Assembly: GCF_003704095.1 (NCBI RefSeq)
Contig: NW_020844919.1
Location: 62,001 to 125,346 of the forward strand
DNA from: Pocillopora damicornis
Taxonomy: Eukaryota
Length of the DNA: 63,346 bases
Reading direction: 5' to 3'
Part shown: positions 10,524 to 62,207 of the stretch, one piece after another
How positions within the stretch are numbered: position 1 is the first letter of the stretch
Layout of the letters: each line of letters opens with the position of its first letter
Translations under genes and position numbers: made by a program
Notes under the pieces: model-generated
Told to the model about the DNA's origin: nothing
What the model saw: only the letters and a program-made list of their open reading frames with translations
Databases searched by the model: none

Positions 10524-10653
10524 GGGATTCCCCTCGATGCGCTTATGTTTCTCTAGTTGATTATTTTAGCGCGTAATTTTCCGCATCGCGCGTAGCGCGT
10601 TGGTGACGCAATGAAGTGGAAGGAAAATATATCATTGGTGTAAAGTATATAAA
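10524..10653 (+). promoter_or_regulatory. Promoter of cytokine-like gene 1: NF-kB site, CRE/C-EBP composite site, TATA box
   Basis: GGGATTCCCC at 10524-10533, TGACGCAAT at 10604-10612, TATATAAA at 10646-10653, ATG at 10783. Confidence 0.65.
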
Positions 10654-10782
10654 GTAGCTTCGCTTTAAGAAAATTTCAAATCCATCTGTTGTTGGCTTTG
10701 CGCTGGTATTCAACCGTTCCAAAGACAGACCGAGCGGTGCAATTGTTTTAAGCTGTGAAAGTCGAGTAAAACACCAAGAATT

Positions 10783-10803
10783 ATGCTGTTCTCAGTTATT
10801 AAG
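10783..10803 (+). CDS. Cytokine-like gene 1, coding micro-exon 1 (MLFSVIK)
   Basis: ATG...AAG|GTAAGA phase-0 donor downstream of a TATA box; joins in frame to the acceptor at 11562/11563 and completes a signal peptide. Confidence 0.75.
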
Positions 10804-11562
10804 GTAAGATGGAAATTATTTTTCAGCAGTAATGAAAAACCACTGTGGTTTTCATTCATTCTCTTAGTTAACACGGGGCTTTGGTAAGGCATCCCGAAAC
10901 TTGAATTTAAACGTAAATATTACATCAGTCTTGTAATTTGGAAAAGATATGGAATATACAGACCAACTTAAATTACAATTTGATGTTGAAAATCACTTGT
11001 TATATTTACGTGTGAGTTTGATACATTTGTTGTAATGGCATTGGATAATTTTTTTTAGGTTTTGTTCACGGTTCGCGAATTTTATATTGTACTAAAAATT
11101 AACATTTCGATTTGCTCACTCACCTGAAACAGATTCACTATCACGCACATTTTACACTGAGTTTGATTTAATGAAATAATAACTGATATATTTAAAAAGC
11201 GTTGGCTGAAAACTTCAGCATTAAAATTAATCTGTGATTTACCCCTTTTTCTTATCCTTTAATAGATACTATAACCGAAAATATCTCATTTCTACGCAGA
11301 GCAAATGCAAAAACTGTCGTTCAAATGTGGGAGGTCAGATAGTGAAAGTTCAAAAGTGTTTTTGGTAATTGTTAAGATTTGAAGACCAGAGTGAGCGAGG
11401 CGAAAATATTTTTGATTAGTCAGTTATTTAATCTACTGTAAGGTGAAATCAGAATTATTGATTAAGTATGATGCCAATTTCTCTTGACTCAGCAATATTT
11501 ATATTAGCATAAGAACTTACAATCGCAACAATCTATTTATACTTTTCTTCATTATGTTTCAG

Positions 11563-12003
11563 GCGTTTTGGGCAGTTTTTACGCTCCTCTATTTGGCCCA
11601 AATGATCAACTCAGCTCCTTGCGGAGTGACGTTAGTTACACCAAGAAAAGTCGTGGAAAGAGTTTCCAGGTCTGGTTGGTTACTGGTGCGAGGAAATTCA
11701 TGGGAGGATTTTAGGAAAAGTTTGAATATTCGGCCTCGCCAGAGGAGAGGCATTAATCAAAGAAAATCCCGTCACTGTAATTGGACTGACGAGCTTGACG
11801 AGAACGTAAATAGAAAGCCAAGATTTTTACACAAAGCAGTACTAGGGTGCAAAAGTTGCTCTTCGTTTTGCAAGCCCGTGGAGTTTGATCATAAGGTACT
11901 TGTTAAAGATTGTAACGCCAGTCTAAGAACTCACAGAGAGAGAATGGACGTCTGGAAATGGGAGACAGTGACACTACCAGTGGCGTTTGTGTACAATCCT
12001 TAA
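11563..12003 (+). CDS. Secreted IL-17/Trunk-like cystine-knot-superfamily protein 1, exon 2 (153 aa spliced)
   Basis: Signal peptide, APCG, basic RPRQRR, then CNW..DE..NRKPRFL.KA...CKSCSSFCKPV....KVL...C...WKWE...PVAFVY. The CxW-x6-R-x-P-x2-L-x2-A-x-C pattern resembles the IL-17 core. Three paralogs occur in this window. Confidence 0.8.
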   Translation, partial: AFWAVFTLLYLAQMINSAPCGVTLVTPRKVVERVSRSGWLLVRGNSWEDFRKSLNIRPRQRRGINQRKSRHCNWTDELDENVNRKPRFLHKAVLGCKSCSSFCKPVEFDHKVLVKDCNASLRTHRERMDVWKWETVTLPVAFVYNP

Positions 12004-15310: not shown

Positions 15311-15364
15311 GGGGTTTCCCTTAGCTGCAATAATGGCACACCCATTCTAGGGTGTCTTAAATAG
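15311..15364 (+). promoter_or_regulatory. Promoter of cytokine-like gene 2: NF-kB site and TATA-like element
   Basis: GGGGTTTCCC at 15311-15320, TTAAATAG at 15357-15364, ATG at 15469. Confidence 0.55.
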
Positions 15365-15468
15365 GATGGCAGAAACTTCGTTTGCAATACTTTAGAATCA
15401 CCTTGGATTTCGTTGACTAAAACGACTGGCCAACACTTTTAGCTCCTCACAGCAGCATATTCGGCGAA

Positions 15469-15492
15469 ATGAATTTAAGGAAGCTTCTCTTG
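15469..15492 (+). CDS. Cytokine-like gene 2, coding micro-exon 1 (MNLRKLLL)
   Basis: ATG...TTG|GTGAGT phase-0 donor. Exon 2 has no ATG before its hydrophobic stretch, so an upstream exon is required. Confidence 0.75.
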
Positions 15493-16560: not shown

Positions 16561-16583
16561 GTTGTTGTTGTTGTTGTTGTTGT
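16561..16583. repeat. (GTT)n microsatellite
   Basis: gttgttgttgttgttgttgttgt. Confidence 0.9.
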
Positions 16584-16799
16584 TTAGCTTTTTTTTTAGT
16601 TTTGTTTGATGTAAATTGTTGGAATGTTGACAATTTGTTTGCCTAGGTTGTCGAAAACGCATGCGCAGTCTATACAACTAACAACTTTTCAATTCCACTT
16701 CACGCACCGCATGATTAACTTTTACTCCCCTGCGTAGAAGATGTACTGTAAATGTTAGACTGATGATAAGGTTAATAAGACATAACTTGTTCCTCACAG

Positions 16800-17240
16800 A
16801 TTCCTGGCTTGCTGGCCTCTTTTGTTATTACATTACTGGCAGGGCCATTGCCACAACCATGTGGTAAAAAAATGTACCCTAAAAAGGTGCTGCGACGTAT
16901 ACTGAAGGAGAAACGCTTTATGATCATGGAAAACGCCATGGCTGAGGCAGACGAATCAGGCCTTAAGATACCGCTACTAAGAAAAACACGCTCTGCCTCG
17001 CCCATAATGCAGGGGGCATCTCCCTGTCAATGGCAATGGCGGTCTACAGACCGACCAAGTGAAATTCCAAGGTTTTTAAGAGAGGCACATTGTCCAAACT
17101 GCGACCATTACTGTACCGCCATAAAGTACACAGTTAAAGTTTTGGTCCAAGATAAGTGCGACCCAAAAAGCGGCTTACCAATCTGGCGATGGAAGGAACG
17201 TGAAATAAAAGTTGGGTACTTTTACAAGGGAAGCAGATAA
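16800..17240 (+). CDS. Secreted IL-17/Trunk-like cystine-knot-superfamily protein 2, exon 2 (154 aa spliced)
   Basis: Acceptor cctcacag at 16799. Signal peptide, QPCG, furin-type RKTR, then SPCQWQW..DRPSEIPRFLREAHCPNCDHYC..KYTVKVL...KCD..WRWKE..VGYFY. Confidence 0.82.
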   Translation: MPGLLASFVITLLAGPLPQPCGKKMYPKKVLRRILKEKRFMIMENAMAEADESGLKIPLLRKTRSASPIMQGASPCQWQWRSTDRPSEIPRFLREAHCPNCDHYCTAIKYTVKVLVQDKCDPKSGLPIWRWKEREIKVGYFYKGSR

Positions 17241-19339: not shown

Positions 19340-20181
19340 CTACTCCAGAGCTTTGATCTCCTCGACAGCTTTCCTCAACGACTTAATGCATATCACAAGC
19401 TCCTCTTTCGTTTCCAATCGTTGCAGGCCCAGACCTAAAAGCTTATTCAATGCGTCCATAAGGCGTGCTTTCAAAACAGCATTACCGTTGCTCCCTTGAT
19501 TTCCTCTCATCGCGCCATAAGGGTTGTCGCCGACGCTCTGTGTCATCGGTGCACTACAGTTGGAAACGTCCACATTAGTAGAGAAGGGGTAGGTATTGAG
19601 CTGAACTGTTCCCCCACGAATTTCTGCATTGGCAGCTTGCGTGGCTTGACAGCTCTGAAAACTCCTGTCTGGAAGAAGAGAGGACATACCTTGCTGTTGC
19701 TTCCCTGTATATTCTTGCACATCTACTTTTTCCGCAAGTAAAGGAGTGAACGTTTTCTGAATCTTCGTCGTTATCGGACCCTCTTCGGAAGCAGAAAGAG
19801 GTCCTGTGGAAGCATCGAGCCGGGTGGTTGTCAAAGTAACCGTTTCGTTTGCACCAAGGTGGTTCCTACTTTGCTCCAGACGTGAAGATTTCACAAACGG
19901 CGCAGAGCTGGTTGGTGAAACAAGAGGATGTCCCCTCTTCTGTTGATCAGTTGGATAGGTGTAAGTCCTGAGCCTCAATGGAGACGAGAATTCATTTGCT
20001 GATGCTGTGCGATTGACAGCTGTCTTTCCACCTACAAATCCACAAAAGTTTTTCTATTTTCAACTTTTATAAACGTAACTTAGTTTGTTAGAGCTAAAGT
20101 AAGAATATTATTTTCTGCTTTTAAGGGGCTCTACAATAATTATCAGTACGGCGGAGGGCGNNNNNNNNNNNNNNNNNNNNN

Positions 20182-20223
<42 letters not shown>

Positions 20224-21497
20224 AGCTGCTGAAAAGCTGACTGAAGGATTCAAATACCCAACTATCTTACTAAAATGATATTCATTACTTTTTGGGACTG
20301 ATTTGATATGAATAAACATAGTGTATATGCATAAAAATTTAACAAAGAGCTAACAGTAATTAATAATTGTTTTGAAGCAGTTTTTAAGGTCCTCAATCAG
20401 ATGGCCATAAGTTAACATGGTGCCCCCCTCTTTATACCACCCCCCCTCCCCCCCCACCCCCTTCTCCTGATAATTATTGCACAGTCCCTAATCGGTCAGA
20501 AATGGGCGGAAATTTCAAGTTTTTAACACAGTTTTGAGGGCATTACAGAAAGCAACCCTGCTTACATGTCGAACTATTTTAACACGCTAATAAAAAATTC
20601 AAATTTCGAAACCAAGAAACAAACATTTCTTTATTCCGACAGGAAATAACTTCGTGGTCATTAGATTTTCCCTTTTTGCATGACGTTGTTTAAAAATTGA
20701 TGAACCCACTTTTATGTGCTGTGTCCTTTTCTTTCTTAGCTACGAATTCTTCAATTTTAAATTTCCTGAGGTTTCCGTATATCAAATCGTTGCCTTTACG
20801 CAGGGCCCACCAAGGCAGCTAACAACAGTTGCGAATTCATTACCAATGTGGCTACTCAGTTTGAAATAGATTATCATCACTTTAATCAGGACCTTTGATA
20901 GGCATTCCTGTTTAACATGCATATATACTTAAACTACATCGTAGTCTTGCAAATTCAATTCTTTCATATTTCAATTCGAATAACTTTCATAGAGTAAGAC
21001 TTTACAAAATGATGCTTTAAATCACCTTTTAAGTCGCTACTATTCACCGAAGAACAGCTGTCGATGTGATGAGGTGCGCTCATTTTCCTTACATTCTTGG
21101 AGGGAGAGGAGTTTGGTGTGACAAGGTCATTCCTTTCGTCATCGGTAACAACTCTTCTTTTCCAATGCTGGCTCTTGTCCAAGGTGTTGCTGTCCGCCAT
21201 CTGAGACGCCACGAACTCTTTAAGTTTTTCTTCCATGCAAAAGGGTATGCAGCAGTAAACGTCATCGCACGATTCAGCGTGTTTTTTAGCGAGGTTTTTC
21301 ATGCGTTGGCACACCTGGCACTGGGTCTTTTTGCAGCCCTGTGTGTGTTTCATCGTCAACTTCATGTTCACACAATGTGGAAGTGGACACTCGGGGTTCC
21401 AACAATTTAAAGTGTGTTCTAGAAGTTCTAGGGAACTTTTAAACCGTCCTTGTACGGCAGCTGCATCTTTTGTGTTTGTGGTTTCCTGTCCTGCCAT
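19340..21497 (-). CDS. Stand-alone TAZ2-type zinc finger protein 1 (CBP/p300-like fragment, no HAT), 2 coding exons, 387 aa
   Basis: Exons 21497-21026 and 20031-19340 join in frame across a phase-1 GT-AG intron. Three complete HCCC sites (HTLNC..C..C, HTQGCKK..C..C, HAESC..C.IPFC) resemble CBP TAZ2 (HACQC, HTKGCKR, HAKHC..CPVPFC). The C-terminal helical motif is shared with the three paralogs. Confidence 0.85.
20125..20488. mobile_element. PIF/Harbinger (Tourist)-like MITE in the intron of TAZ gene 1
   Basis: TAA-ggggctctacaataattatcag ... ctgataattattgcacagtccc-TAA; contains poly-G/poly-C tracts and a small gap. Confidence 0.7.
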
Positions 21498-26784: not shown

Positions 26785-26798
26785 GCTCCATCGTGCCT

Positions 26799-27920
26799 TT
26801 ATACTTGCGTCCCCAGAAATACTTTGGTTTCGTGTAAAACGTCTGTTAGTAACCGAATGCACATCTGCTGTTCCTCCGTGGACTTTGTTTGCATCAGCAG
26901 GCGTTGAATACTGTATAGCGCATACATTAGGCGTGCTTTCATCTGAGTTCTGGTATTACCAGTATCATTGTCAGCTCCATTATCTACGTTAAAATTCCTC
27001 TTTTGCGGTGTATTACCGGAAGTTCCAGGTTCTTGAGGAAAAGGAGGACTTGTCTCTGAATGTATTCTCTGGCGCTGTACTGCATTGTCGATTTGGCTTG
27101 TCTGCAGAAGCGCGGCATTCTGGCCTTGCCCAAGAGTAAACGGATACGGGACGTCGTTACCAACACTGTTGTTCGGAGCTGACGCTTTAGCCCAAGCATT
27201 TATTGTTGTATCCTGTGAGTACGGCGAAGAGCCAGTGGCAGTGGGCGGTGTTGTTAAGGTGCCTGCTGAGGATACTGGAAAAAGCTCCATTAAAGCACGA
27301 CGCGTTAAGCCTGTCATACCATTGGCTGCGTTTACACTGGATTGATCTTTACGTTGTAAAAGACAAGACTGAGGAGCCAGATGTGCAGGCGAACAGGTCG
27401 TTTGAACCGAGCTTGAATGGTTAATCAATACGTTTAATGGTTGAACGGTTGGGTTGACTTTCATCGCGTCTTTCGCGTTTTTTAAGTAAGGAGGAGGTGC
27501 TGGGGTTGATTTTGCCAGTCTCTGAGTCACTTTACTCCTCACTCCTTGAGGTCTTGATATCTCAGAACTATCTCTTTGTTCGAATGAAAACTCTAGGGGA
27601 AAATTGTCTTTGATTACATCCCCTAGGTGATCATTCAAGTCAGTTTGGGCTCCTTTGTAAGGGTTGTCATTTGCACCCATGCGAAAAGGTATTAGGCACT
27701 TGGGTTCAATACAGGATCCAGCAGGTTCTATAGTTAGGGTTTTCAACGTTTGAGAAACTTTGCAGGCATTAACAGTTTGAAATCCCTGCGAATTTTTTAG
27801 CTGTAAAAGTTTCTTATTTACGCATATCGGAATGATACATGCGGAATCTGAGCAATTTAAGGCGTGCTGTTGTAACCCTTGCGAATTATGGAGTATTCTC
27901 TTTGGTTCTGGTTCTGCCAT
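26799..27920 (-). CDS. TAZ-family protein 2 with degenerate zinc finger (373 aa from the likely ATG)
   Basis: Part of the 415-aa ORF. An acceptor (cacag) at about 27954 precedes MAEPEPK at 27920. The first HCCC site is intact (HALNCSDSACIIPIC), sites 2-3 are decayed; C-terminal MKARLMYAL motif parallels LKARLMDAL of paralog 1. Confidence 0.8.
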   Translation of the reverse strand: MAEPEPKRILHNSQGLQQHALNCSDSACIIPICVNKKLLQLKNSQGFQTVNACKVSQTLKTLTIEPAGSCIEPKCLIPFRMGANDNPYKGAQTDLNDHLGDVIKDNFPLEFSFEQRDSSEISRPQGVRSKVTQRLAKSTPAPPPYLKNAKDAMKVNPTVQPLNVLINHSSSVQTTCSPAHLAPQSCLLQRKDQSSVNAANGMTGLTRRALMELFPVSSAGTLTTPPTATGSSPYSQDTTINAWAKASAPNNSVGNDVPYPFTLGQGQNAALLQTSQIDNAVQRQRIHSETSPPFPQEPGTSGNTPQKRNFNVDNGADNDTGNTRTQMKARLMYALYSIQRLLMQTKSTEEQQMCIRLLTDVLHETKVFLGTQV

Positions 27921-30851
27921 TAGTTTAACTCGAATGTCCCTGGCGGGAAGAACCTGTGTGGTTGAAAGTAAAGATGAGAACAGATGGATGGTTTGGATTA
28001 AATACCCTTGGCGTGCACAATCCATGAATAAATCTATGTATATCACTTAGCATTCAAAGTTGCGTTCAATAAAAAAATACCGGCAGCTTGTGATATCTCC
28101 CTTTTCCGTGTTTCTTGACGAAAGGGATTCAAATTTCTCAGTTCCCTTTGCGCTGAACTCTCGCGAATATGGGGCTCTCAAGCTGAGGAATTTTATTGAC
28201 ATTCCTTAATAGATAATAAAATGATAATAGGTGGGTCGTTTGTGGCGTGAGGGTAATTATTTTTCCCTTAAGGCGGAATTTAATAGTTAATAGTTGCTAA
28301 GAATTAAAGATTGTGCTTTTAGCTTTGGCTAAAATATTTCTTTTCATATCGGACACTATTGCCACGAAGTAACAGAGTCACGGTGAAAAGGTTTGAGTCG
28401 TTTTTGTGCAACAAGTAGAAGGAAACGGTTGATCCTAATTTCCAAGGTGAAAAAGTTCTTAATTTGCAATGTTACAGGCACACTTAGGGTTGCTGTTTCC
28501 ATAGCTTCTCCCAACTTCAAAGATACTCGCTAAAGCGTGAGGCCGAGGAAAGAGGCCGCAGAAATTTTTCCCTCTCGTCATTTGTTTTCACTCATTTTTA
28601 TTCGTGGCTTGGAGCCCATACTTATCTCTCATCTTTTCAAGCTTCATTTTGCAATTCTACTTGAGTGCGAATATGAGTCATGTTTACCTTTAAGGCGATT
28701 TGAGTTTACTGACTTTCCAGATTATCAGAAGATGCTATTTCGTTGCATGTTAAGCGATTAAAGCTTACAACCAGAGGTAAAAAATTGAATTGCTTTGCCA
28801 ACCTTTTTCAGGTTACGCATTTGCGATTTAACAGAAATGAAAATTGTTTTATTCACCCAGCACCCATAGAGGGCTGTCCTTAATAAATATACTTGTTTCA
28901 AAATTATTCATATCACAAAAATTACACCTCTTCAGTTGTTTTCAAATCATAATTCTAAGTGTCAAGCTACTTTCTCCCTGCAAGAGTCCACTATTTAAAA
29001 TTTCGATAAACGTACTTTTGGGATGCATTTGAAAATGCATCGTCTCTTGGGCAGTCATATCTACCACAAGAATTAACTTCATTCTATGAAGTAATCGGTA
29101 GCACCCAAGGATATTAAGGTGAAAATTTAGCATTGATCAAAATCTCACCTGTTCTGCAGCTCAGTTCTTTTACTGCAAAACTGTTCTTCCTTACTTGTGG
29201 TAATTTCTCCCCAAAATAAAGCGTGTGAAATTGTTACTGATTGTTCGGTTATTTAACCTAGTCGAAAGATAACAATTTCCTGTGTGGGTTGGATAGCGAA
29301 ATGTACCAGATAGTTCTACCTTGGAATTTTTCCCACCGTGACCACCCACGCTTTTGGTATCAGACCGGCCGATGTGTTTCCAAGTTAAATATTTATTTTA
29401 GACGAGGACTTTTCAACCATTTCATTTCATTTATAAACTCTTTTCTCCATGAAAATACAACAGTACAAAAGGGCACTTAGAAAAAAAGAAAAAAGAAAAG
29501 GTTGGATAGATAAAGGTAACTCCTTGTTCGTTATTTTCTTCTCCCACTGTATTGAGGTTATTTGCAAAACCGTGCGATGGGTCTCTCGATGTCACGGTCT
29601 GTCTAACATGCACGTATGTATGAATATAGTGAAGACAAATTCGCGTAACTGGAGTAACTTATAAAAAATCTTAAATATTAGGCCGCAGATAATAAACATT
29701 AGGATCAGTTCTGCTAAAAAAAAGTTTAAAATACTTTTAATTTTTGTCTTTTATTTGCATTCCCCCGCATTCCTAAAGTTTTCTAGAATTTTAGTTTACT
29801 TTTAAAGGTGACCCAAAGAGGTCATGTTAAAATATCTCAGTACCCAGTAATTAAATGGGTCAACAACTCAGGCTATATCATAAAATTATTTTAATTTTAA
29901 ACATAGGCAGGACCAATTAGCAATCGGACCAAGTTCGACTCATCTAAATTGTTTTAATTGTAAACAAAGGCAGGACTCACTTTTAATCGGACCACGCAGG
30001 ACTTTATCTGAAACTGCAAGAGTTGTTTATCTGATTTTAAGGAAAAGCACTTTCAATTTTTGTGTTAAAAGACACTAATTTATAATTAATACTAATTTAG
30101 TTCAAACATCATATGAAACGTTTCACTTCAGCTTTACTTCAACGCTTCTCCTTATTCTTATATAAACCAAATTGTTAATGGACACCTTTTTCTCCTACAA
30201 TCCCTCTGTGAAGATTCAAGTTTCTGGACAAATCCCAAAACAATTGTGAACGTGATAATCTTTTCCTATTATCTGCAATAAAGTTTATCATAGAATCTCA
30301 TTTTTTACATTTTTGTAGTGCCTTCGACTGCCCGTCACCAACCGGATAAATTATTCGTGAATAGATTCCCTTTGTGACCTTGCGGGCGTAAGAGTATTTG
30401 TTAGACTTAATATGCTATTTTTTTTTGTTATGGCGTTTGTTTAGACTGAATTTTTTTAGGGAATGCTGCACGGTTATTTTATGGAAATTCTACGGTTAAG
30501 ATTGGTATCAGGGAAAAGTGAAGGTATTTTAAAGAGTGATGTCTCTGAAAAACTCGAAATTGCGTAACTTTTGGCTCCCTAAACTGAAGTAGGAAACGCG
30601 AACACCTCCACCGTAACCCCACGGTGTCCAGCCTTTCCGCCATTGGCCTACGCTTTTTTTACCACGTAAAGCCCCTGGGTGGATGGTAAAAAATTCATTC
30701 ACTTGACGGACCCCATCAAAGTTGAGTGGTCAAAATTTAGGCACTCGAAAAATTAATTAAAAAGAAACCTTGACTACGTCTCAAACTGGCTTGCACAGTC
30801 TGAAGACGTCAGTGAAAGGTATTCTCATTTCTTAGTTGATTTTAATATATT

Positions 30852-33030: not shown

Positions 33031-34479
33031 TTACCACTTTGCTATCTCTGTTTTCATCATACCAAGAGTCCGTTCAAGCAAATCAACAAACACAGCTTCT
33101 TGTTTCTCTGTTTTGGGCTGAGTTACAACTCCGAACAGTTGAAATAACGTTTCCAAGAGGACAACCTTCAATGCTGAGGAATTTTCTTTAGATCCAGCGT
33201 TCTCTCCCAGCCACATTTCAAATGTTGGAGATGGTGGTGGTGTGGAGAACATCTCTTCGAGAAAATCATCCACTAAATCATTATTTACTTTACCTTCATC
33301 CTGACAGGCCTGATGAAAATCAGTCTGAGAGGAATCCGAGAAGGTGAACCGACTCTTTGCAGAAACTTTTGAATACTGCACTCCTGCTGTAGGCTTAAAA
33401 GAAGGGACTTTCTTTGGTAAGGTATTTCTTTTGGTGAAGTGGCACTGGTGTGTCATTGAGCCCGCTTTTTCATCCTGTTTCTTGGCGGCAATCCTCAAAG
33501 GTACTCGTGGTGAGAACATGGCTTTGCTGGACTTCTCCTTACAACGGTTGGTGTCGTTCGGCGGGGCCGTTCCTTTAAGTTGGTTAGCTAGTCGCCCAGA
33601 TGATTTTATTCCTATTATTTCGATCTCAGGACTATCATCTTGCTGTGATTTAAGACCAGTAGAGGCACCTCGAATAACTTTAGTCGGTGGAGAAGCCGAT
33701 TCACCAGTAGAGACGGTGATGGCCTCGCATTTCCTTTTAGGGGCTGGTCGAGGTTGGTTCGTAACTGAAAAAATATCCGCTTTGGATGGTAACCGTTTCA
33801 ACGTACAGGTTGGGATGTAGTTTCCATGCAAACTCTCATGGAGGCCAGACTGAGGGTGTTTTGGTTTTTGTACGGTTGACGAACGTTTTCTCAAATCTGG
33901 CAGGATCGGCTCCACTGAGTCAGGGACCTGAGTTGAATTTTCGGTTGCAAGTTGAAAGTAACTTGCCTCTGACAATGGCGCCTGTGTGGCCGGAGTGTTC
34001 CTACTGGGTCCATTGTTGAGTTCAACCAGTGTTGATGTTTCACTGTTTCTAACTGCCATGCAGTGAGAATCACTATGCATTCTGGAAGCTTCCTCTCGTC
34101 TACATTCCTCTTTTGCATCTTGCGAAGGATGAATGGCTTCACCATCTTCTTGGCTGTCCAGTCCTGCATCGAACACTTTCCCTAATTCATCCATGAGTAC
34201 CTGTTGTTGTGCCGTCACTTTGGCTTCCATGCAAAATGGCACACGGCAGTAATAGTCTCTACAGGAATTGGAATGACTTGAGGCGAGAGACTTGATCCCC
34301 TGACAAATTGTACAGTTGTCTACCTTTTTACAGCCTTGCGCGTGCCGCAAAGTTAGTTTTAAGTTAACACAGAGAGGTAAAAGGCAGTTAGGGTCGACAC
34401 AATCCAGTGCATGTGGAAGAAAATTTTGTAGTTCTTCGTGCCAAGCTTGTCCGGACATCGCCTCGTAACGGGAAGCCAT
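33031..34479 (-). CDS. Stand-alone TAZ2-type zinc finger protein 3 (CBP/p300-like fragment, no HAT), 482 aa
   Basis: Single long ORF with three intact HCCC sites (HALDC..C..C, HAQGCKK..C..C, HSNSC..CRVPFC), an S/P/Q-rich linker and the shared C-terminal helical motif; acceptor at about 34509. Confidence 0.9.
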   Translation of the reverse strand: MASRYEAMSGQAWHEELQNFLPHALDCVDPNCLLPLCVNLKLTLRHAQGCKKVDNCTICQGIKSLASSHSNSCRDYYCRVPFCMEAKVTAQQQVLMDELGKVFDAGLDSQEDGEAIHPSQDAKEECRREEASRMHSDSHCMAVRNSETSTLVELNNGPSRNTPATQAPLSEASYFQLATENSTQVPDSVEPILPDLRKRSSTVQKPKHPQSGLHESLHGNYIPTCTLKRLPSKADIFSVTNQPRPAPKRKCEAITVSTGESASPPTKVIRGASTGLKSQQDDSPEIEIIGIKSSGRLANQLKGTAPPNDTNRCKEKSSKAMFSPRVPLRIAAKKQDEKAGSMTHQCHFTKRNTLPKKVPSFKPTAGVQYSKVSAKSRFTFSDSSQTDFHQACQDEGKVNNDLVDDFLEEMFSTPPPSPTFEMWLGENAGSKENSSALKVVLLETLFQLFGVVTQPKTEKQEAVFVDLLERTLGMMKTEIAKW

Positions 34480-34610
34480 TTGTATCAGCTTCTTGAAAGA
34501 GAGTCTTCTGAAGGAAAAAAATCCAGATAAGAAATACCATTATCAGTGATGATGTAAACGAGCAGAAATAGACACATTGAACATGTGATTATCAGCTGTA
34601 CGATTATGCG

Positions 34611-34620
34611 GGGTTTTCCC
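34611..34620 (-). promoter_or_regulatory. NF-kB-type site 5' of TAZ gene 3 CDS
   Basis: GGGAAAACCC on the minus strand, about 130 bp upstream of the ATG (promoter or first intron). Confidence 0.4.
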
Positions 34621-47600: not shown

Positions 47601-49191
47601 ATAATACAGCAGTCTTTAATTTTTTAGTCAGATTTTTGTTTCAGCATCTAACTACTTCCTTAGGATATTACATACACAAATTGTCTGGTGGAAGGCATAA
47701 GCATAATTCAGTTTGATTCTCGTTAGGATCTGAAAATACCTCAGAGTGCCAAATAAATATTCAACAATTTCACTTACTAGAAGGCTCCATTTTTCGTCAC
47801 CCAACTTTTTTGTTAGTCACCCTTTTTTTCCTTTCCTCGTTTTTTTCCCTTTTCTTCCTTTTCCGCATTGAAAATAAACCTCTTGTAATCCTGATAGGCT
47901 TTACTAGAAGACTCTCATTTCCGTGTCTGTGTTTTTCGTCCTAGAATTCCCTGTTTTTTTTTCAGTAAAACCGGCCGACTGAGAATTGACCAACCATTAA
48001 TTAATTCAAGATTAAGAAAGGGGACTGGCGAGTCAGCTCTCTATTTAGAGTTAATGGGAGCAGACTCTCAGTGTTCAAAAATATTTATAAACCACTTAGG
48101 ACCGAAAAACACGTTTCAGCATGATTCCGTCGAACCAAACTGGCTACTTAAAGCGACAAAGTCATCCGTTAGTCAAAAATTTGTCAACAGAACTAAATAT
48201 TGCAAAACTCACCGCTACAATTTATGTTAGTAGAAAACAATAAAAACACTATTAAAACATAATTAATATTACGTCTATCAAACTCAAGAAACGTTTGTAA
48301 ATCTCACCAGTTGTTGAACTTATTGGTTAGAATGAAGTGGTTTCCATAACTACTTGGACAAGTTAGACCCTTCTGTTCGTTAACGCAAGACTACTAACAC
48401 TGCATAATATTTTGATATGATAGTCCTTCATGCCCATCTTTGTAGTTCGATTTGCTGAGACAATCTTAATACTTAACATAGCGACGTTACGTCAGAGAAA
48501 GTCATGCTTCACTCAACGTTAGTCTTCCATATAGACAGCAAAAATAGTTGTTGGAACTTACGAACGAGTGAGGATTTAACTTCGTGGTATTCGAATAATC
48601 AAACCAGAATCAACCGGAAAGCGCGCTCACCATGGATACTCAAGTGCAACAAAGTTTGCGGCTGTCTATGTATTTGATGAGTTTATTTTAATTAATTGTA
48701 ATCATTGTCCGCGATTCAATGGCATAACCAAAAGTGAGACTAAAATGATAATAGGACTCGCTCTAATGGAGAGAACCTCAAATTACGACAATTTCAGGAG
48801 AAGAATCTTCATTTCGAAATCGGACTTGACTCAATTTCCACACAATGGTGTTATTACGCCGAACATTGTACTGTTCACTTTAAAGTTCATGAATAAACAA
48901 ACCTCCTCCGAGACCGGATTTCCTCTAGTGTCTCAAAAATACATCCGGCCTTGTGGGCGTCTGTTTATTCAAAGGGTTTTACTTAAATTAAATTTTTCCT
49001 TGCTGTTAAAAAGGTAATGCGGTGTTGATATGTTGTATCGGCAACTTCATACGCTTGGCATGTTTGTGGTTTTTTGTTTGTTATACTAAACAACTTCCTT
49101 TTTTAAATGCCGAGGTTTTGTTTGCCTCTGATCGCTGCTGGAATTTGTGAACACTAGCTATATTGTAATTATCATTTCTTGTATTTTTCAG

Positions 49192-49638
49192 CTTATTTGT
49201 CTACTGATTATTTATCTGTCCACAATGACGTCATTTGTAAACTCGTTACCATGCCAAAAAAGGACCAACATACAAGCGCCACGAGTATTACGTCTTCTTG
49301 AGGAAAAATACATTTTCGTGAAGAAAAAGACAAGAAGTGAAATTCCACTTCTTACAACCACTCCATTTCCACGACGAAGAACTACTCGAGTTGCAGACGC
49401 TTCAAACATACCGGGAACTACTTATTGTCCGTGGGTCTGGGAACAGGACGATGATCCCGAACGTGTCCCGCGGATATTAGTAAAAGCTAAGTGTCCTGGA
49501 TGTAAACATTTTTGTAAACCTGTACACTACCACCACACGGTTCTAATAGCAAAATGCGACAAAACTACAGGTCACAAAGTATGGAAGTGGAGGGAGAGAA
49601 AACTTGCCGTGGCATATGTTTATGAACCTTACGATTGA
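49192..49638 (+). CDS. Secreted IL-17/Trunk-like cystine-knot-superfamily protein 3, exon 2
   Basis: Acceptor tttttcag at 49191. Signal peptide, LPCQ, RRRTTR, then CPWVWEQDDDPERVPRILVKAKCPGCKHFCKPV (compare the IL-17 SPW...EDPERYP.VI.EAKC motif), ending WKWRE..AVAYVY. Confidence 0.85.
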   Translation, partial: LICLLIIYLSTMTSFVNSLPCQKRTNIQAPRVLRLLEEKYIFVKKKTRSEIPLLTTTPFPRRRTTRVADASNIPGTTYCPWVWEQDDDPERVPRILVKAKCPGCKHFCKPVHYHHTVLIAKCDKTTGHKVWKWRERKLAVAYVYEPYD

Positions 49639-55379: not shown

Positions 55380-56361
55380 GTAAGATATCTGTTAAGTTCT
55401 GAACCTTTATAGACTGTGTATTAAGTAAAAACTAACTGAAAACGAGTGTTTATTTTATTACGTAAGCAATAGTCTAATATTTATCCAGTCTTCTCTGTCT
55501 TTCTACAAGACGGAGTTACATTAGTCTGGAAAAGAAATTTTCGGTCATTAATTTCATCAAGATTCGCCAACAAAGTTCGAAGTGGATTTAAAGTAAAAAT
55601 AAAAACTTCTTTGTAAAATCTCTTGTTAGCGTTTGGTTTCCATGAGGCTAATTCGTAACATAAAAAAAGGTTTTCTTACGCGGGTAGCCGAACATTTGCA
55701 ACAAATTTAAATTTTATCTGTAAATGCTCTTAACAGAAATCTCTACGGAAAAATCGTTGGAGAAAAAAATATACTATCTGATAATCTTAACACTTTTAAC
55801 TATAAAAACCCAAACACTAGGCAGTACGCATTCTCACAATTCATTTGAAAGTAAAATCTCCCCTCTCGGTCGCGAGTTAATGGTAAACGCACTCTCGTGT
55901 AAATCTTTAAAGCATCACATGTTTTGAGACTGATTTGAAACAAATCTTAAATTCAAATTATTGGTATCATCACTAACACCCACCGATTACTTTATGCGGC
56001 ATAAGTTAGCCATTGGTATCATTTGACTGGCTTTTTGTTTTTTAGTTTTTTTAATGAATCGTTCTTGCGTTCCTTGATCAGAACGTGAAGCTGAACAAAA
56101 AAAGAACAAAAAAATAATTTTTTCTTTAGTAATTTATTATCTTGCATGAAATTGGAACTTTATGAAATCTATGTCCTCTTTCACGTTGCCCACGAAACTC
56201 CCTCGCCAGTAGTAACTGACTTGCTTGTCAATTTTACGTCAATGTATTGACTCTAAATTTGTGAGACAAAGGAGACGTGCTGACGTAAGGGCTAGCGCTC
56301 TTAGCACTACTCTGTACTATTATATGTTTATCTTTTTGTGTGTGTTTGCTTACTCCTCTTT

Positions 56362-56384
56362 TGTTTGTTTGTTTGTTTGTTTGT
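56362..56384. repeat. (TGTT)n microsatellite
   Basis: tgtttgtttgtttgtttgtttgt. Confidence 0.85.
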
Positions 56385-56495
56385 TATTTAGTTTTTTGTT
56401 TTTCTTTAGCATATGTAAGTGATCAGGTGCGATGTTTAATAATCTTGTGGAAACGAAAAATGATGAAAGAATCCTTTTTGTTTCGTAATTCGCAG

Positions 56496-56924
56496 TTTTT
56501 GATGTGTGCGATTTTCATTGCGGTTATCATTTTTGGCTCCATGTCACCACCTGGTTGCAGCGGCTGTGTGGCGAGACAAAACTTAACTGATACTCAAATG
56601 ATGCAACGGATTCGCCAAAGGGGCTACCTTTTCATGAAAAACAAGCTCATTGGTTCTAATGGCTCCCAAAACAACTTCCCCAACGGGGCGCATGCAGGTA
56701 CCACACTATGTCCGTGGAAATGGGCTTTAGATGACAATCCCGACCGACTTCCCAGATTCCTATCAAAAGCTGTATGTCCTTCATGCAATCATTACTGCAA
56801 AGCCATACACTATACGCACACCTCTCTCATTCAGCGGTGCGATCGAACAACCGGTCTGATGTATTGGTCGTGGATGCCAAAGACAATGGCAATAGCTTAT
56901 GTGTATGTACCTAATAGAAAATAA
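56496..56924 (+). CDS. Secreted IL-17/Trunk-like cystine-knot-superfamily protein 4, exon 2 (147 aa spliced)
   Basis: Signal peptide, SGCV, then GTTLCPWKWALDDNPDRLPRFLSKAVCPSCNHYCKAIHY..RCD..WSW..AIAYVY; closest to paralog 3 (GTTYCPWVW). Confidence 0.85.
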   Translation, partial: FLMCAIFIAVIIFGSMSPPGCSGCVARQNLTDTQMMQRIRQRGYLFMKNKLIGSNGSQNNFPNGAHAGTTLCPWKWALDDNPDRLPRFLSKAVCPSCNHYCKAIHYTHTSLIQRCDRTTGLMYWSWMPKTMAIAYVYVPNRK

Positions 56925-59851: not shown

Positions 59852-59945
59852 TTTTTTTTTTCCCGCACGTCTCAAGGGCACAGGATTAGAACCCGGGTCG
59901 TCTGTCTCGGAGCCCAGTGCACTGACCACTGGACTACTGAACAAA
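59852..59945 (-). mobile_element. tRNA-derived SINE / tRNA pseudogene with A-tail
   Basis: Minus strand reads tagtccagtggtcagtgcactgggctccgagacagacgacccgggttctaatcctg (A box, B box, imperfect stems), followed by an oligo-A tract. Confidence 0.55.
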
Positions 59946-61223
59946 GCCGTGGCGCATGTTAAAAGTAGCACTTTGTACGGTCGTACGGTCATACATCCAA
60001 ATTTTTTCGGCTTGATGGGTTTCAACTATTTTGTATAACTAGTTATAGTTCTCACTAGAGCTGCCCCCGCCCTACAGTACCATTTTNNNNNNNNNNNNNN
60101 NNNNNNNNNNNNNNNNNNNNNNNNNNNNNNNNNNNNNNNNNNNNNNNNNNNNNNNNNNNNNNNNNNNNNNNNNNNNNNNNNNNNNNNNNNNNNNNNNNNN
60201 NNNNNNNNNNNNNNNNNNNNNNNNNNNNNNNNNNNNNNNNNNNNNNNNNNNNNNNNNNNNNNNNNNNNNNNNNNNNNNNNNNNNNNNNNNNNNNNNNNNN
60301 NNNNNNNNNNNNNNNNNNNNNNNNNNNNNNNNNNNNNNNNNNNNNNNNNNNNNNNNNNNNNNNNNNNNNNNNNNNNNNNNNNNNNNNNNNNNNNNNNNNN
60401 NNNNNNNNNNNNNNNNNNNNNNNNNNNNNNNNNNNNNNNNNNNNNNNNNNNNNNNNNNNNNNNNNNNNNNGCCTCCTCGGGTTTTTGGCCCTCTGGGGCC
60501 AAAAACCCTGCGGGGGCAATTATGGGGTTACGTTCTGCGAGCTCCGCTATTATGTTCTTGCTGGGGCACTTTACCTTTACCTGAGTATTGTTATTTAGTA
60601 TGAGTATTGTTATACAGGAGCTGGTACTGCTGATGCTGGAGCGATATTTACAACATCAAGCACTTGGTTTGGCGCCGGAGGAGCAGGCACTTGTACAGCC
60701 ATGAAGCGAGGAAACGGGTTTTGGAGTGCCAGCTAAGCAGCTGGATCCAATCTAAACGGCGGGCTAGAGTAGAGCTGAAAGGGGTAGGCCCAACGTGGCA
60801 TTCATAATTTGGATATTCCCCCGAGGTATTTTATTAATATATGCAAATTACTTTGCATTGCTAGTCGAAGCACTGTCGCCTTTTTCCCGTTGAACCATAA
60901 CATCAATAACGACCGATTTCTTGATTGGTGAGCTAAACCCGAAATATCTGTTTACTGAAAAACATTTTCATTAGGATATCAAGTTTTGTACAACTTGAAT
61001 TTGAAGTATAATAGCCTTGAATCTGCTTTTTTATCTATTCAATGTAATTTAATGCAACACTTTTTACAATTTACAAAAAATATTTTCAAGATTTCGCGAA
61101 CAAAAAAAATTGACACATTGGTACAGATCGAACCGGAGTCTCCAATCTCATCAAGAACAATGAAAATATATCAGTAATCTACAACTTCATATTACAAACT
61201 CTTGCCGCGGGTCTATAGTAAAC

Positions 61224-62207
61224 TCACTTGATGCTCTCTCGTGACGTTACATTCTGTATCTCTCTGAGTGCCTTTTGAAGAACATGGACAAAAAATGTTT
61301 CAGCTTCAGCAGACATGGGTTTTTCAAACATATGCAATATCTGCGCGAGGATTCCAAACACCATTCGGCTAGGGTCGGAATGTGTGCCAAGAAATTGCTC
61401 TGAGGCGCTCGAGAAGTGGCAAGCAGTCTTCTCCCGCACGATGGTGGCTGGTATTGGCATGGTTTTCGTCATAGAGGAATCTTTCCGCGTGCGTTTAGCA
61501 GCATGAATGTCCCCTGACCTTTTTACTGGGACAGTAAATTGATCTGTTGATGCAAACTGCTCATAGAAACTTGGAAAGAAAGGATCTTCGTCAGATTCCT
61601 TATTCAGCCTAACCGCGGAATTAGAAGGTTTCATAAAGGTAGATCTCCTCCCCTCAAATTTTGCGTCGTAATCGCGGGAATAAGGTTGATGGTTTCTCGC
61701 TGTCTCGCCGGGAGTCTGGCCATCCCTTTTTGGGCTGTAACAGTGCAACGAATCTGTCTGTCGAGGAACTTGACAATCCTCTTTTGGGTTATAAAGGGGA
61801 AACGAGGTCGTCTGCTTTTCAATCCCAAAACGACCACTGAAACCAGGCTGTGGGGCCATATCAGCTACCTGTCGTTCCAAAAACCTCTCATACTCTTCTA
61901 ATTCATCCAGGAGCTGTTTCTCTGCATCATGATCTAGAATGGCTGGACTTAAGGACGCTACATTGCTATCATTATTACTGTTCTGCAAGATGTTCGCAGT
62001 CGTGTCAGCCGAAGCCCCACCGGCCTGACTGTCAGGTTTGTCTTTTCGAGATGTGCTGACATGCCTGGTTTGCAACTTAAAGTTCACGCATTGTGGCAGG
62101 ACACAGAAGATGTCTGCACAATTTTTTCCGTGAACATCATAGTCAAGACTCCCTCGAAATGTTGGGGCATTACGCATGACAGGCGCCATATGCAGAAGTC
62201 TGTTCAT
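61224..62207 (-). CDS. TAZ-family protein 4 with a single remaining zinc site, 327 aa
   Basis: HGKNCADIFCVLPQCVNFKL matches site 1 of the paralogs (HALDCVDPNCLLPLCVNLKL). The C-terminal ILAQILHMFEKPMSAEAETFFVHVLQKAL aligns with the paralog 3 C-terminus. Acceptor at about 62220. Confidence 0.8.
   Translation of the reverse strand: MNRLLHMAPVMRNAPTFRGSLDYDVHGKNCADIFCVLPQCVNFKLQTRHVSTSRKDKPDSQAGGASADTTANILQNSNNDSNVASLSPAILDHDAEKQLLDELEEYERFLERQVADMAPQPGFSGRFGIEKQTTSFPLYNPKEDCQVPRQTDSLHCYSPKRDGQTPGETARNHQPYSRDYDAKFEGRRSTFMKPSNSAVRLNKESDEDPFFPSFYEQFASTDQFTVPVKRSGDIHAAKRTRKDSSMTKTMPIPATIVREKTACHFSSASEQFLGTHSDPSRMVFGILAQILHMFEKPMSAEAETFFVHVLQKALREIQNVTSRESIK

What the first reader, a model, noticed from the sequence alone, without database searches (positions are those of the whole stretch)
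10524..62207. Interleaved two-family locus: secreted IL-17/Trunk-like cytokines (+) and HAT-less 'mini-CBP' TAZ2 proteins (-)
Seen: eight consecutive genes from only two families, with strict strand segregation (cyt+,cyt+,TAZ-,TAZ-,TAZ-,cyt+,cyt+,TAZ-) and no recognisable unrelated gene between them. Both families are strongly diverged internally, so the linkage looks old. Established: CBP/p300 TAZ and NCBD domains bind activation domains of STAT, p53, C/EBP, RelA and IRF3, and IL-17 cytokines are NF-kB-linked immune signals. Inference: this is a co-regulated immune/stress module pairing a secreted signal with nuclear coactivator decoys or adaptors (feedback control). I know of no described locus of this kind, but cannot search for one.
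Basis: partly seen in the sequence, partly recalled or inferred. Interest (0 to 1): 0.9.

Follow-up and report, generated by a model that had tools for sequence, protein, structure and literature searches.

The report
Coral IL-17 and mini-CBP gene cluster
In the stony coral Pocillopora damicornis, genes for secreted IL-17-type signalling proteins sit interleaved with genes for short, enzyme-less relatives of the coactivator CBP; the neighbourhood is real, transcribed and partly shared with other corals, but nothing yet shows that the two families work together.

Summary
The window is the last 63 kb of a 125,346-bp Pocillopora damicornis scaffold. It carries four IL-17-family genes on the + strand and four TAZ-domain genes on the - strand, in the stated order.

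- **IL-17 genes:** they lack the terminal CxC, which matches the published cnidarian T3 type. A profile search, Pfam and a confident model that matches IL-17A/F/IL-25 all agree.
- **TAZ genes:** only two of the four keep a full TAZ2 zinc-ligand set. All four share a C-terminal helical motif that aligns in register with the coral's own CBP NCBD; this similarity is suggestive, not proven.
- **Transcription:** RNA contigs from four studies show cyt2 and TAZ1 spliced and transcribed tail to tail. The gap at 20161-20181 lies inside a GT-AG intron.
- **Gaps:** independent assemblies span two further gaps; the gap at 51001-51100 was not tested.
- **Extent:** every TAZ-like gene in the genome (11-12) and all nine IL-17 genes of this subfamily lie on four scaffolds.
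- **Conservation:** Oculina patagonica has a tail-to-tail IL-17/TAZ-like pair, and another coral keeps TAZ3 and cyt3 linked. Three other loci show no partner within 10 kb.
- **Strand rule:** strict strand segregation holds only in this window.
- **Function:** coupling between the families is untested.

The scan noted the TAZ genes, the NCBD-like helix and CxC-less IL-17 genes before.

The parts
11554..12003 (+). cyt1: IL-17-family gene (149-aa ORF with its own ATG and a hydrophobic N-terminus)
   Evidence: family HMM E 5.8e-38. The most divergent member: a long branch in the tree.
15469..15491 (+). cyt2 exon 1, coding part (ATG plus 7 2/3 codons of the signal peptide)
   Evidence: Loose ends of RNA contigs from four studies at 16799 map to 15463-15491 and are in frame with exon 2.
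16799..17240 (+). cyt2 exon 2, coding part (IL-17 domain). The transcript runs on to about 18016.
   Evidence: RNA contigs start at 16799, after an AG acceptor, in all four runs. Pfam IL17 is sub-threshold; family HMM E 8e-39.
19340..20031 (-). TAZ1 last exon, coding part (disordered region plus C-terminal NCBD-like motif). The 3' UTR runs to about 18162.
   Evidence: C-terminal motif HMM E 1.1e-15.
20032..21025 (-). TAZ1 intron (GT..AG on the - strand). It holds the assembly gap 20161-20181, flanked by a simple C/G repeat.
   Evidence: A joint skipping 994 bases is seen in RNA contigs of all four runs, each from a different study. Junction letters were read.
21026..21497 (-). TAZ1 exon with the start codon and a complete TAZ2-type zinc finger. 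The exon runs to 21520, and a 5' exon lies at 23108 onward.
   Evidence: Pfam zf-TAZ 42.9 bits, E 6.6e-11. Splice evidence.
26799..28046 (-). TAZ2 gene: TAZ-family gene with a degenerate TAZ domain (only the first zinc site is intact) and the C-terminal motif
   Evidence: (no Pfam hit). Independent Tara scaffolds call a 408-aa product here.
33031..34479 (-). TAZ3: the slowly evolving member. It has a full TAZ2-type domain, a disordered middle with a conserved KRK motif, the invariant motif TPPPSPTFEMW, and a C-terminal two-helix NCBD-like domain.
   Evidence: Pfam zf-TAZ 38.1 bits. Full-length orthologues occur in Stylophora, Oculina, Porites and Montipora. PDB profile search gives p300 TAZ2, E 7e-14. 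AF2 helices at 431-451 and 458-481.
49147..49638 (+). cyt3: IL-17-family gene, main exon. The RefSeq model XP_027041737.1 adds two residues from an upstream exon.
   Evidence: AF2 model with pLDDT 86; Foldseek top hits are IL-17F/A/IL-25.
56340..56924 (+). cyt4: IL-17-family gene, with orthologue-like genes in Oculina
   Evidence: reciprocal best hits, 52-56% identity. The tree gives 99/99 support.
61224..62207 (-). taz4: clade-B TAZ-family gene. Only the first HCCC zinc site is left, and the C-terminal motif is conserved. It lies tail to tail with cyt4.
   Evidence: (Stylophora LOC111338957, 63% identity).
15311..15320 (.). kappaB-like palindromic site, 158 bp upstream of the cyt2 ATG (a lead only)
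   Evidence: The overall count in the window is not significant.
34610..34619 (.). kappaB-like site at -140 of the TAZ3 ATG. It is kept at -149 in one other coral and absent in two (a lead only).

Best explanation
The locus is part of an old birth-and-death gene array in the stony coral Pocillopora damicornis. I infer that it grew by repeated segmental duplication of a tail-to-tail gene pair, followed by local tandem copies.

**First partner.** An IL-17-family ligand gene of the cnidarian T3 type, which has no terminal CxC. It is secreted, and its signal peptide is split by an intron. By homology it acts on the IL-17R/CIKS pathway.

**Second partner.** A gene with a single coding exon, or nearly so. 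I infer that it arose by duplication of the terminal exon of CBP, which in this genome encodes TAZ2 and NCBD together.
- Its product keeps a TAZ2-type zinc module, a disordered middle with a basic NLS-like motif, and a C-terminal two-helix NCBD-like motif.
- It has no HAT, bromo, KIX or ZZ domain.
- It is therefore most likely a nuclear protein that binds activation domains of transcription factors without acetylating. It would act as a competitor or adaptor of CBP.

**Shown:** gene content, family membership, transcription and splicing of one pair, confinement of both families to four scaffolds, and partial conservation of the neighbourhood in other corals.

**Inferred:** the CBP-exon origin, nuclear activator binding, and that the adjacency persists by descent and perhaps a shared chromatin domain. 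Functional coupling between the two families is not shown.
For: **IL-17 membership.**
- A HMMER profile search found 147 relatives.
- Of 78 aligned relatives, 45 hit Pfam IL17, best E 6.6e-15.
- The AF2 model has pLDDT 86, and its Foldseek hits are all IL-17A/F/IL-25.
- The T3 type is described in PMC11087794. PMC8353272 reports 11 IL-17 genes in P. damicornis.

**TAZ family.**
- Pfam zf-TAZ passes for TAZ1 and TAZ3.
- The best PDB matches are p300/CBP TAZ2.
- hhalign against the coral's own CBP TAZ2 gives probability 96%.

**C-terminal motif against the CBP NCBD.**
- The alignment is in register, P 4-5e-4.
- None of 100 shuffles reaches the score.
- The best local match within the 728-aa CBP terminal exon is the NCBD.
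- Domain order is the same in both proteins.

**Expression.** RNA contigs of four studies show cyt2 and TAZ1 spliced and convergent, with 3' ends at about 18016 and 18162.

**Extent of the array.**
- Family searches of the whole genome place all 11-12 TAZ-like genes and the nine closest IL-17 genes on C1554, C147, C1689 and C3161.
- TAZ3 and C147 tazA share a 1,374,789-bp contig in an independent assembly.

**Pair structure.** Four of six family boundaries in P. damicornis are tail to tail.

**Conservation in other corals.**
- Oculina has two cyt4-type IL-17 genes and a clade-B TAZ-like gene 3.3 kb apart, tail to tail.
- An unnamed coral keeps TAZ3(-) and cyt3(+) 22 kb apart.
Against: **Loci without the partner family.**
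- Porites lutea has a tandem TAZ3 pair with no IL-17 gene within 10 kb.
- In ERZ26692694, an IL-17 gene and the TAZ3 orthologue lie 1.56 Mb apart, with no partner within 10 kb of either.
- In ERZ25067556, a clade-B TAZ-like gene has no IL-17 gene within 10 kb.

**Weak points in the NCBD claim.**
- Pfam Creb_binding does not hit the C-terminal motif.
- hhalign probability is only 2-35%.
- The TAZ3 model is poor, pLDDT 42.

**Other limits.**
- Half of the window's TAZ genes have lost most zinc ligands.
- Co-duplication of pairs rests on a few pairs and on short, poorly resolved trees.
- From memory, not tested here: coral genomes are generally highly syntenic, so conserved adjacency alone is weak evidence for constraint.
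Confidence: 0.6

Rival explanations
1. The IL-17 ligand and the neighbouring mini-CBP are co-regulated in immune or stress responses. The nuclear TAZ2/NCBD protein acts as a decoy or adaptor that feeds back on NF-kB-, C/EBP- or STAT-dependent transcription downstream of IL-17.
For: - Both genes of the cyt2/TAZ1 pair appear as spliced transcripts in the same four RNA libraries, with abutting 3' ends.
- kappaB-like sites lie 158 bp upstream of the cyt2 ATG and at -140 of the TAZ3 ATG. The TAZ3 site is kept in one other coral.
- The tail-to-tail pair is conserved in Oculina.
- Established knowledge: p300/CBP TAZ2 binds C/EBP, p53, STAT1 and RelA activation domains, and the top PDB hit here is a TAZ2-C/EBP epsilon complex.
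Against: - There are no co-expression data across conditions. Contig depth cannot rank genes.
- The kappaB-like count is not significant (8 of 100 shuffles reach it), and the TAZ3 site is absent in Porites and in ERZ26692694.
- Three loci in other corals lack the partner within 10 kb.
- The literature searches found no report of such a link.
Confidence: 0.2
2. Neutral neighbourhood. Two unrelated, fast-evolving families happen to lie side by side, both expand by local segmental duplication, and slow genome rearrangement in corals keeps them together. There is no shared regulation or function.
For: - All copies sit in one region, as in-situ duplication predicts.
- Orientation and order vary between sub-loci.
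- The partner is missing within 10 kb at three loci of other corals.
- A second IL-17 subfamily elsewhere in the genome has no TAZ-like neighbour.
Against: - Tail-to-tail pairing recurs at four of six family boundaries and again in Oculina.
- The 3' ends of cyt2 and TAZ1 lie within about 150 bp of each other.
- Interleaving, rather than two homogeneous arrays, suggests that the pair was copied as a unit.
Confidence: 0.3
3. The degenerate TAZ-family copies (the TAZ2 gene, taz4 and the clade-B genes on C147, C1689 and C3161) are decaying relics. Only TAZ3, and perhaps TAZ1, are functional.
For: - The TAZ2 gene keeps only the first zinc site, and taz4 has lost the second and third sites entirely.
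- Pfam zf-TAZ fails for them.
Against: - The ORFs are intact, 290-415 aa.
- The first zinc site and the C-terminal motif are conserved while the middle diverges.
- Clade-B genes have counterparts in Stylophora (63% identity), ERZ25067556 and Oculina.
Confidence: 0.15
4. The arrangement is a scaffolding artefact of the draft assembly.
For: - There are four gaps in the region, and the cluster runs to the scaffold end.
- C147:1-1037 matches repeats next to the window's end, and the long-read contig does not support its join to the rest of C147.
Against: - RNA contigs bridge gap 1.
- Independent Tara scaffolds bridge gaps 2 and 4.
- TAZ3 and tazA share a long-read contig.
- Oculina and ERZ25067556 show the same linkage in ungapped contigs.
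Confidence: 0.03

Closest known systems
Cnidarian T3-type IL-17 ligands (PMC11087794) and the coral IL-17 repertoire (PMC8353272)
   Same: - Start of the IL-17 profile (CPW...D..R.P..L..A.C..C) and the predicted IL-17 fold.
- No cysteines 5/6 (the CxC).
- Multi-copy in P. damicornis.
   Different: - The window genes themselves fall just under Pfam's gathering score (15-22.5 bits against 24).
- RefSeq calls them 'uncharacterized protein'.
- Their linkage to TAZ genes is not mentioned in the parts of either paper that I read.
CBP/p300 C-terminal half (TAZ2 ... NCBD/IBiD)
   Same: - TAZ2-type HCCC x3 module (TAZ1, TAZ3).
- The same order, TAZ2 then a long disordered linker then a helical motif that aligns with NCBD.
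- In this coral, CBP encodes both domains in one exon.
   Different: - No KIX, bromo, PHD, HAT or ZZ domain, and no Q-rich tail.
- The NCBD-like motif is predicted as two helices and does not hit Pfam Creb_binding.
- Half of the copies have lost zinc sites 2 and 3.
Stand-alone TAZ-domain proteins (plant BTB-TAZ proteins, recalled from memory; small TAZ-only clusters of nematodes and arthropods in the ESM Atlas)
   Same: A TAZ zinc finger without an acetyltransferase domain.
   Different: - No BTB domain.
- The coral family has its own conserved C-terminal motif and the invariant motif TPPPSPTFEMW.
- The Atlas hits score 0.80 and are leads only.
Vertebrate IL17A-IL17F tandem locus and other cytokine gene clusters (recalled from memory)
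   Same: Tandem duplicated IL-17 paralogs, such as the sister pair cyt3 and cyt4.
   Different: Here the ligand genes are interleaved with a nuclear-factor gene family, and the pairs lie tail to tail.

Membership tests
IL-17 (Pfam PF06083) | Sequence match to the IL17 profile at the curated threshold | tested here: inconclusive
   The window genes score 15.2-22.5 bits against a cut-off of 24, and cyt1 gives no hit. Of 78 relatives found with the family profile, 45 hit IL17, best E 6.6e-15. The link is therefore transitive.
IL-17 (Pfam PF06083) | Cystine-knot-type four-strand fold of IL-17 | tested here: met
   The AF2 model has pLDDT 86 with four long strands. All top Foldseek PDB hits are IL-17F/A/IL-25, E 4e-4 to 1.5e-3, target-normalised TM 0.46-0.60.
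IL-17 (Pfam PF06083) | Cysteines 5/6 (C-terminal CxC) of the knot | tested here: not met
   The CxC is replaced by VAYVY-type residues in all seven aligned paralogs. This is the published T3 variant of cnidarians, so it does not exclude membership.
IL-17 (Pfam PF06083) | Secreted (N-terminal signal peptide) | tested here: met
   Hydrophobic N-termini. The RNA-supported cyt2 exon 1 (ATG at 15469) and the RefSeq cyt3 model (starting MFKLICLLIIYLS...) give typical leaders. No signal-peptide predictor was run.
IL-17 (Pfam PF06083) | Binds an IL-17 receptor and signals through SEFIR/CIKS | not testable with these tools
   The pathway components are reported in cnidarians (PMC11087794). No binding test was possible.
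TAZ zinc finger (Pfam PF02135), TAZ2 type | Profile match above the curated threshold | tested here: met
   TAZ1 scores 42.9 bits and TAZ3 38.1 bits against a cut-off of 25. The best PDB matches are p300/CBP TAZ2. The TAZ2 gene and taz4 do not pass.
TAZ zinc finger (Pfam PF02135), TAZ2 type | Three HCCC zinc sites (12 ligands) | tested here: met
   All 12 ligands are present in TAZ1 and TAZ3. The TAZ2 gene keeps site 1 only, with 3 of 4 ligands lost at site 2 and 2 of 4 at site 3. taz4 and the clade-B genes keep site 1 only. So the feature is met for two of the four window genes.
CBP/p300 acetyltransferase family | HAT (KAT11) domain with bromo, KIX and ZZ domains | tested here: not met
   Pfam finds no such domain in any of the family's ORFs. 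The true CBP lies on another scaffold (C2761). The UniRef name 'histone acetyltransferase' for the Stylophora orthologue is a misnomer.
NCBD/IBiD (Pfam PF09030 Creb_binding) | Sequence match to the NCBD profile | tested here: inconclusive
   There is no Pfam hit at E up to 1, whereas the coral's own NCBD scores E 2.3e-16. hhalign of the family motif against that NCBD gives 37 columns in register, P 4-5e-4, probability 30-35% (2% against the whole exon). None of 100 shuffles reaches the score, and the best hit in the 728-aa CBP exon is the NCBD.

The most novel reading that the evidence does not exclude
The tail-to-tail IL-17/mini-CBP pair is a conserved scleractinian signalling cassette. The ligand and a HAT-less TAZ2-NCBD protein are switched on together, perhaps through NF-kB sites and a shared 3' region. 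The nuclear partner would then tune CBP-dependent transcription downstream of IL-17 receptor signalling. This would be an ancient, genomically hard-wired cytokine feedback unit.
Probability: 0.15. Interest if true: 0.8.

Novelty: new variant of a known kind. Interest (0 to 1): 0.5.

Why it matters
IL-17 signalling is among the oldest animal cytokine systems, and almost nothing is known about how cnidarians control it.

- **A possible new family.** A coral family of HAT-less proteins that keep the two activator-binding modules of CBP would be a new class of candidate transcriptional modulators. My literature searches found no description of it.
- **A concrete hypothesis.** Its persistent adjacency to IL-17 genes gives a testable idea for coral immune regulation, which bears on disease and bleaching.
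- **If the linkage is neutral.** The locus still documents how the terminal exon of a large coactivator gene can seed a new gene family, and how two families can expand together by copying a gene pair.

Tried and rejected
- **Sea anemone as source.** I first took the genome for a sea anemone. This was rejected when cluster look-ups named Pocillopora damicornis on contigs of exactly 125,346 and 64,628 bp. All cross-species comparisons are therefore among stony corals, not anemone against coral.
- **C147 as the direct continuation of the window's scaffold.** Not supported.
  - The long-read contig shows 9.4 kb beyond C147:1138 with no cluster member and no match to the window's end.
  - C147:1-1037 looks like a repeat piece that belongs next to the window's end.
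- **Tara scaffold L027 as evidence that cyt4 is missing next to taz4.** Rejected. Beyond a dispersed 217-bp repeat it maps to another scaffold (C2597), so it is probably chimeric.
- **Whole-protein AF2 model of TAZ3.** Too poor (pLDDT 42) for a fold search.
- **ESM Atlas.** The search with the C-terminal part gave nothing. The whole protein gave only low-score TAZ clusters.
- **Literature.** Searches for stand-alone TAZ proteins in corals, for the RefSeq locus names, and for IL-17 expression in Pocillopora found nothing on this linkage.
- **kappaB-like motif.** Enrichment in the window is not significant.
- **Joined TAZ1 and cyt2 proteins.** Not built or searched.


Full report
**Source.** The window is G000:C1554:62001-125346, and the scaffold ends at 125,346, so the cluster runs to a scaffold end. 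Cluster look-ups place the exact cyt3 product (XP_027041737.1, 'uncharacterized protein LOC113669855 [Pocillopora damicornis]') on a contig of 125,346 bp. They place pdam_00022516 on a contig of 64,628 bp, which is the length of C147. The genome is therefore the stony coral Pocillopora damicornis. My early notebook wording 'anemone' is wrong.

**Observation.**
- Four ORFs on the + strand (11554-12003, 16809-17240, 49147-49638, 56340-56924) form one family. It has 19 invariant columns, including five cysteines and the CPW and PRxL motifs.
- Four genes on the - strand form the other family (19340-19978 with 20964-21497, 26799-28046, 33031-34479, 61224-62207). They share an N-terminal H-x3-C-x4-C-x-P-x-C module and a C-terminal helical motif.
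- The ten largest other ORFs in between have no Pfam domain.
- No DNA repeat of 150 bp or more exists in 10-63 kb, so the paralogs are old. Protein identity between them is 25-45%.
- Small-exon genes in the 15-kb spacer between TAZ3 and cyt3 cannot be excluded with the tools I had left.

**Gaps, tested first.**
- RNA contigs from four polyA or cDNA studies were laid on 16500-21700. All show one joint that skips 994 bases. With the stated 3-base shift this is an intron at 20032-21025, with GT..AG on the - strand.
- The gap at 20161-20181, flanked by a simple C/G repeat, lies inside this intron.
- The coding parts on each side, 21497 down to 21026 (472 nt) and 20031 down to 19343, are in the same frame across the joint, by my arithmetic. 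I did not build or search the joined protein; the exons were searched separately by reference.
- The same contigs continue from 21520 to a 5' exon that starts at 23108.
- The gap at 30965-31064 is bridged by two independent Tara metagenome scaffolds. They are collinear with the window from 44490 down to 23362 at 99.6-99.8% identity, with a roughly 400-bp local duplication at the gap.
- The gap at 60087-60470 is bridged by one Tara scaffold (61173 next to 59970, same orientation, about 1.2 kb shorter). Further on that scaffold jumps to C2597 at a dispersed 217-bp repeat, so it is probably chimeric.
- The gap at 51001-51100 was not tested.
- I compared block coordinates only and read no letters at any gap.

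**The cytokine family.**
- Pfam IL17 hits three of the four genes below threshold, covering only the first 27 profile positions.
- A profile of seven paralogs found 147 relatives among 1.84 billion representatives. Of 78 aligned relatives, 45 hit Pfam IL17, best E 6.6e-15.
- AlphaFold2 on this alignment gave pLDDT 86 with four long strands. All leading Foldseek PDB hits are IL-17F, IL-17A or IL-25 at about 20% identity.
- The family lacks the terminal CxC. PMC11087794 describes exactly this as the T3 type of IL-17, found in cnidarians. PMC8353272 counted 11 IL-17 genes in P. damicornis.
- So the ligand family is known in kind, although RefSeq leaves these genes unnamed.
- Gene structure: RNA contigs of all four runs begin at 16799, and their loose ends map to 15463-15491. 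That stretch holds an ATG at 15469 in frame. The RefSeq cyt3 model also takes its first two residues from an upstream exon. The signal peptide is therefore split by an intron.

**The TAZ family.**
- TAZ1 and TAZ3 pass Pfam zf-TAZ (42.9 and 38.1 bits) and keep all 12 zinc ligands.
- The profile of 32 TAZ3 orthologues matches p300/CBP TAZ2 best (E 7e-14). It matches the coral's own CBP TAZ2 at 96% hhalign probability.
- The TAZ2 gene has lost five of the eight ligands of sites 2 and 3. taz4 keeps only site 1. 'TAZ2 proteins' is thus accurate for half of the window's genes.
- No other Pfam domain is present.
- TAZ3 is the conserved core member. Full-length orthologues occur in Stylophora (79%), Oculina (47%), Porites and Montipora.
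- In these orthologues the TAZ domain is nearly invariant. So are a KRK motif, the stretch TPPPSPTFEMW and the last 45 residues.
- The whole-protein model is poor (pLDDT 42). It predicts two C-terminal helices, 431-451 and 458-481, at pLDDT 61-77, and a disordered middle.

**Is the C-terminal motif an NCBD?**
- The coral's own CBP terminal exon (728-aa ORF on C2761) carries TAZ2 and, about 240 residues later, an NCBD that hits Pfam Creb_binding at E 2.3e-16.
- The family motif does not hit that Pfam model.
- hhalign does align it with the coral NCBD over 37 columns in register, P 4-5e-4, probability 30-35%.
- None of 100 shuffled NCBDs reached the score (mean 7.7, maximum 12.4, against 19.7).
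- Against the whole 728-aa exon, the single best local match is again the NCBD.
- Shuffling destroys helical periodicity, so this control is lenient.
- I rate NCBD ancestry at about even odds. The same order of domains, and the fact that CBP encodes both in one exon, make a duplication of that exon the simplest origin. This is inference.

**Size of the cluster.** Whole-genome searches show the same two families on three more scaffolds.

| Scaffold | TAZ-like genes | IL-17 genes of this subfamily |
|---|---|---|
| C1554 (the window) | 4 | 4 |
| C147 (64.6 kb, filled by the cluster) | 5, plus one fragment | 3 |
| C1689 (cluster at its start) | 1 | 2 |
| C3161 (gene at its start) | 1 | 0 |

- Outside these four scaffolds the C-terminal motif has no credible hit, and the only other TAZ2 is CBP.
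- About 11 more divergent IL-17-like loci elsewhere (C3135, C3967 and others) have no TAZ-like neighbour.
- TAZ3 and C147 tazA lie on one contig of 1,374,789 bp in an independent assembly. Their distance is unknown.
- In C147 and C1689 the strand rule fails: IL-17 genes occur on the - strand and TAZ-like genes on the + strand.
- What does recur is tail-to-tail pairing. It is seen at cyt2/TAZ1, cyt4/taz4, C147 cytC/tazE and the C1689 pair, which is four of six family boundaries.

**Trees.**
- cyt3 and cyt4 are sister paralogs (94/89). cyt4 groups with the two Oculina genes (99/99), and cyt3 with its orthologue in ERZ25067556 (99/96).
- The TAZ family splits into a full-TAZ clade (TAZ1, TAZ2, TAZ3, C147 tazB and tazC) and a clade with a degenerate TAZ (taz4, tazA, the D/E group, Stylophora, Oculina), with 99/95 support.
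- The two pairs that combine a C147-type IL-17 gene with a D/E-type TAZ-like gene fit co-duplication of a pair. With so few pairs and such short alignments, this is only suggestive.

**Other corals.**
- Oculina patagonica (CM126639.1): two cyt4-type IL-17 genes on the + strand and a clade-B TAZ-like gene on the - strand, 3.3 kb downstream.
- ERZ25067556 (an unnamed coral, more distant than Stylophora): the TAZ3 orthologue (-) and the cyt3 orthologue (+) lie 22 kb apart in the window's orientation.
- Stylophora: the TAZ3 and taz4 orthologues sit on scaffolds of the same length, 1,521,465 bp, and so probably on one scaffold.
- Against the linkage:
  - The Porites TAZ3 tandem pair has no IL-17 gene within 10 kb.
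  - In ERZ26692694, an IL-17 gene and TAZ3 lie 1.56 Mb apart.
  - A clade-B gene of ERZ25067556 has no IL-17 gene within 10 kb.
- The 10-kb reach of the look-ups limits all of these statements.

**Expression and regulation.**
- cyt2 and TAZ1 are present as spliced contigs in all four RNA runs, each from a different study. Their 3' ends lie at about 18016 and 18162, on either side of a repeat that the tool skipped.
- Contigs cannot give expression levels, so this shows transcription and not co-regulation.
- A kappaB consensus occurs six times against 2.45 expected, and 8 of 100 shuffles reach that count.
- Two of the four distinct sites lie 158 bp upstream of the cyt2 ATG and 140 bp upstream of the TAZ3 ATG. 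The TAZ3 site is kept in ERZ25067556 but absent in Porites and in ERZ26692694. This is a lead only.

**Verdict.**
- The age of the linkage is supported among stony corals. All named partners are stony corals, and anemones were not reached.
- The functional reading is untested.
- Literature searches found no description of HAT-less TAZ2/NCBD-like proteins in corals or of this linkage.
- Other readers of this scan noted the TAZ genes, the NCBD-like helix and CxC-less IL-17 genes on this genome.

Noticed in passing
L027:11713-11930 (Tara scaffold); dozens of G000 scaffolds, e.g. C698:48212-48428: A dispersed repeat of about 217 bp, 94-100% identical in more than 35 scaffolds and matching on both strands at 74-77% (partly palindromic, MITE-like). 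A metagenome scaffold turns chimeric at it.
   Followed up: partly
C147:1-1037 (L009) and window 63100-63346: The first 1,037 bases of C147, before its first gap, match tandem repeats that follow the window's scaffold end in a Tara scaffold. They are absent from the long-read contig that otherwise matches C147:1138-12796 at 99.5%. This is probably a mis-scaffolded repeat piece.
   Followed up: partly
window 30559-30964: In two independent scaffolds this 406-bp stretch aligns twice next to the position of the gap 30965-31064, so the gap sits in a local tandem duplication.
   Followed up: no
window 10524-10533: A perfect palindromic kappaB-like site (GGGATTCCCC) lies exactly at the finding's start coordinate, 1.03 kb upstream of the cyt1 ATG.
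   Followed up: partly
window 16798: One RNA run (X12) has a second loose end before 16798 whose letters are not in the window. It may be an alternative 5' exon of cyt2 or a transcript from a paralog.
   Followed up: no
TAZ3 residues 413-423 (window about 33211-33243, - strand): The invariant TPPPSPTFEMW across 32 coral orthologues is a proline-directed S/T-P site followed by an amphipathic F-x-M-W motif. It resembles activation-domain motifs that bind TAZ2, so intramolecular or regulated binding is conceivable.
   Followed up: no
L022:14040-14630: In the long-read Pocillopora contig, just beyond tazA, there is an ORF with the Pfam rva_4 domain. It is probably part of a mobile element.
   Followed up: no
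P0247 (Stylophora pistillata PFX33410.1): UniRef names the TAZ3 orthologue 'histone acetyltransferase', although it has no HAT domain. The annotation was carried over from the TAZ match to CBP.
   Followed up: yes
L013:10001-11089 and 19116-20210 (Porites lutea OY283132.1): The TAZ3 orthologue is tandemly duplicated in Porites lutea, and its middle region is much shorter (362 and 358 aa).
   Followed up: partly
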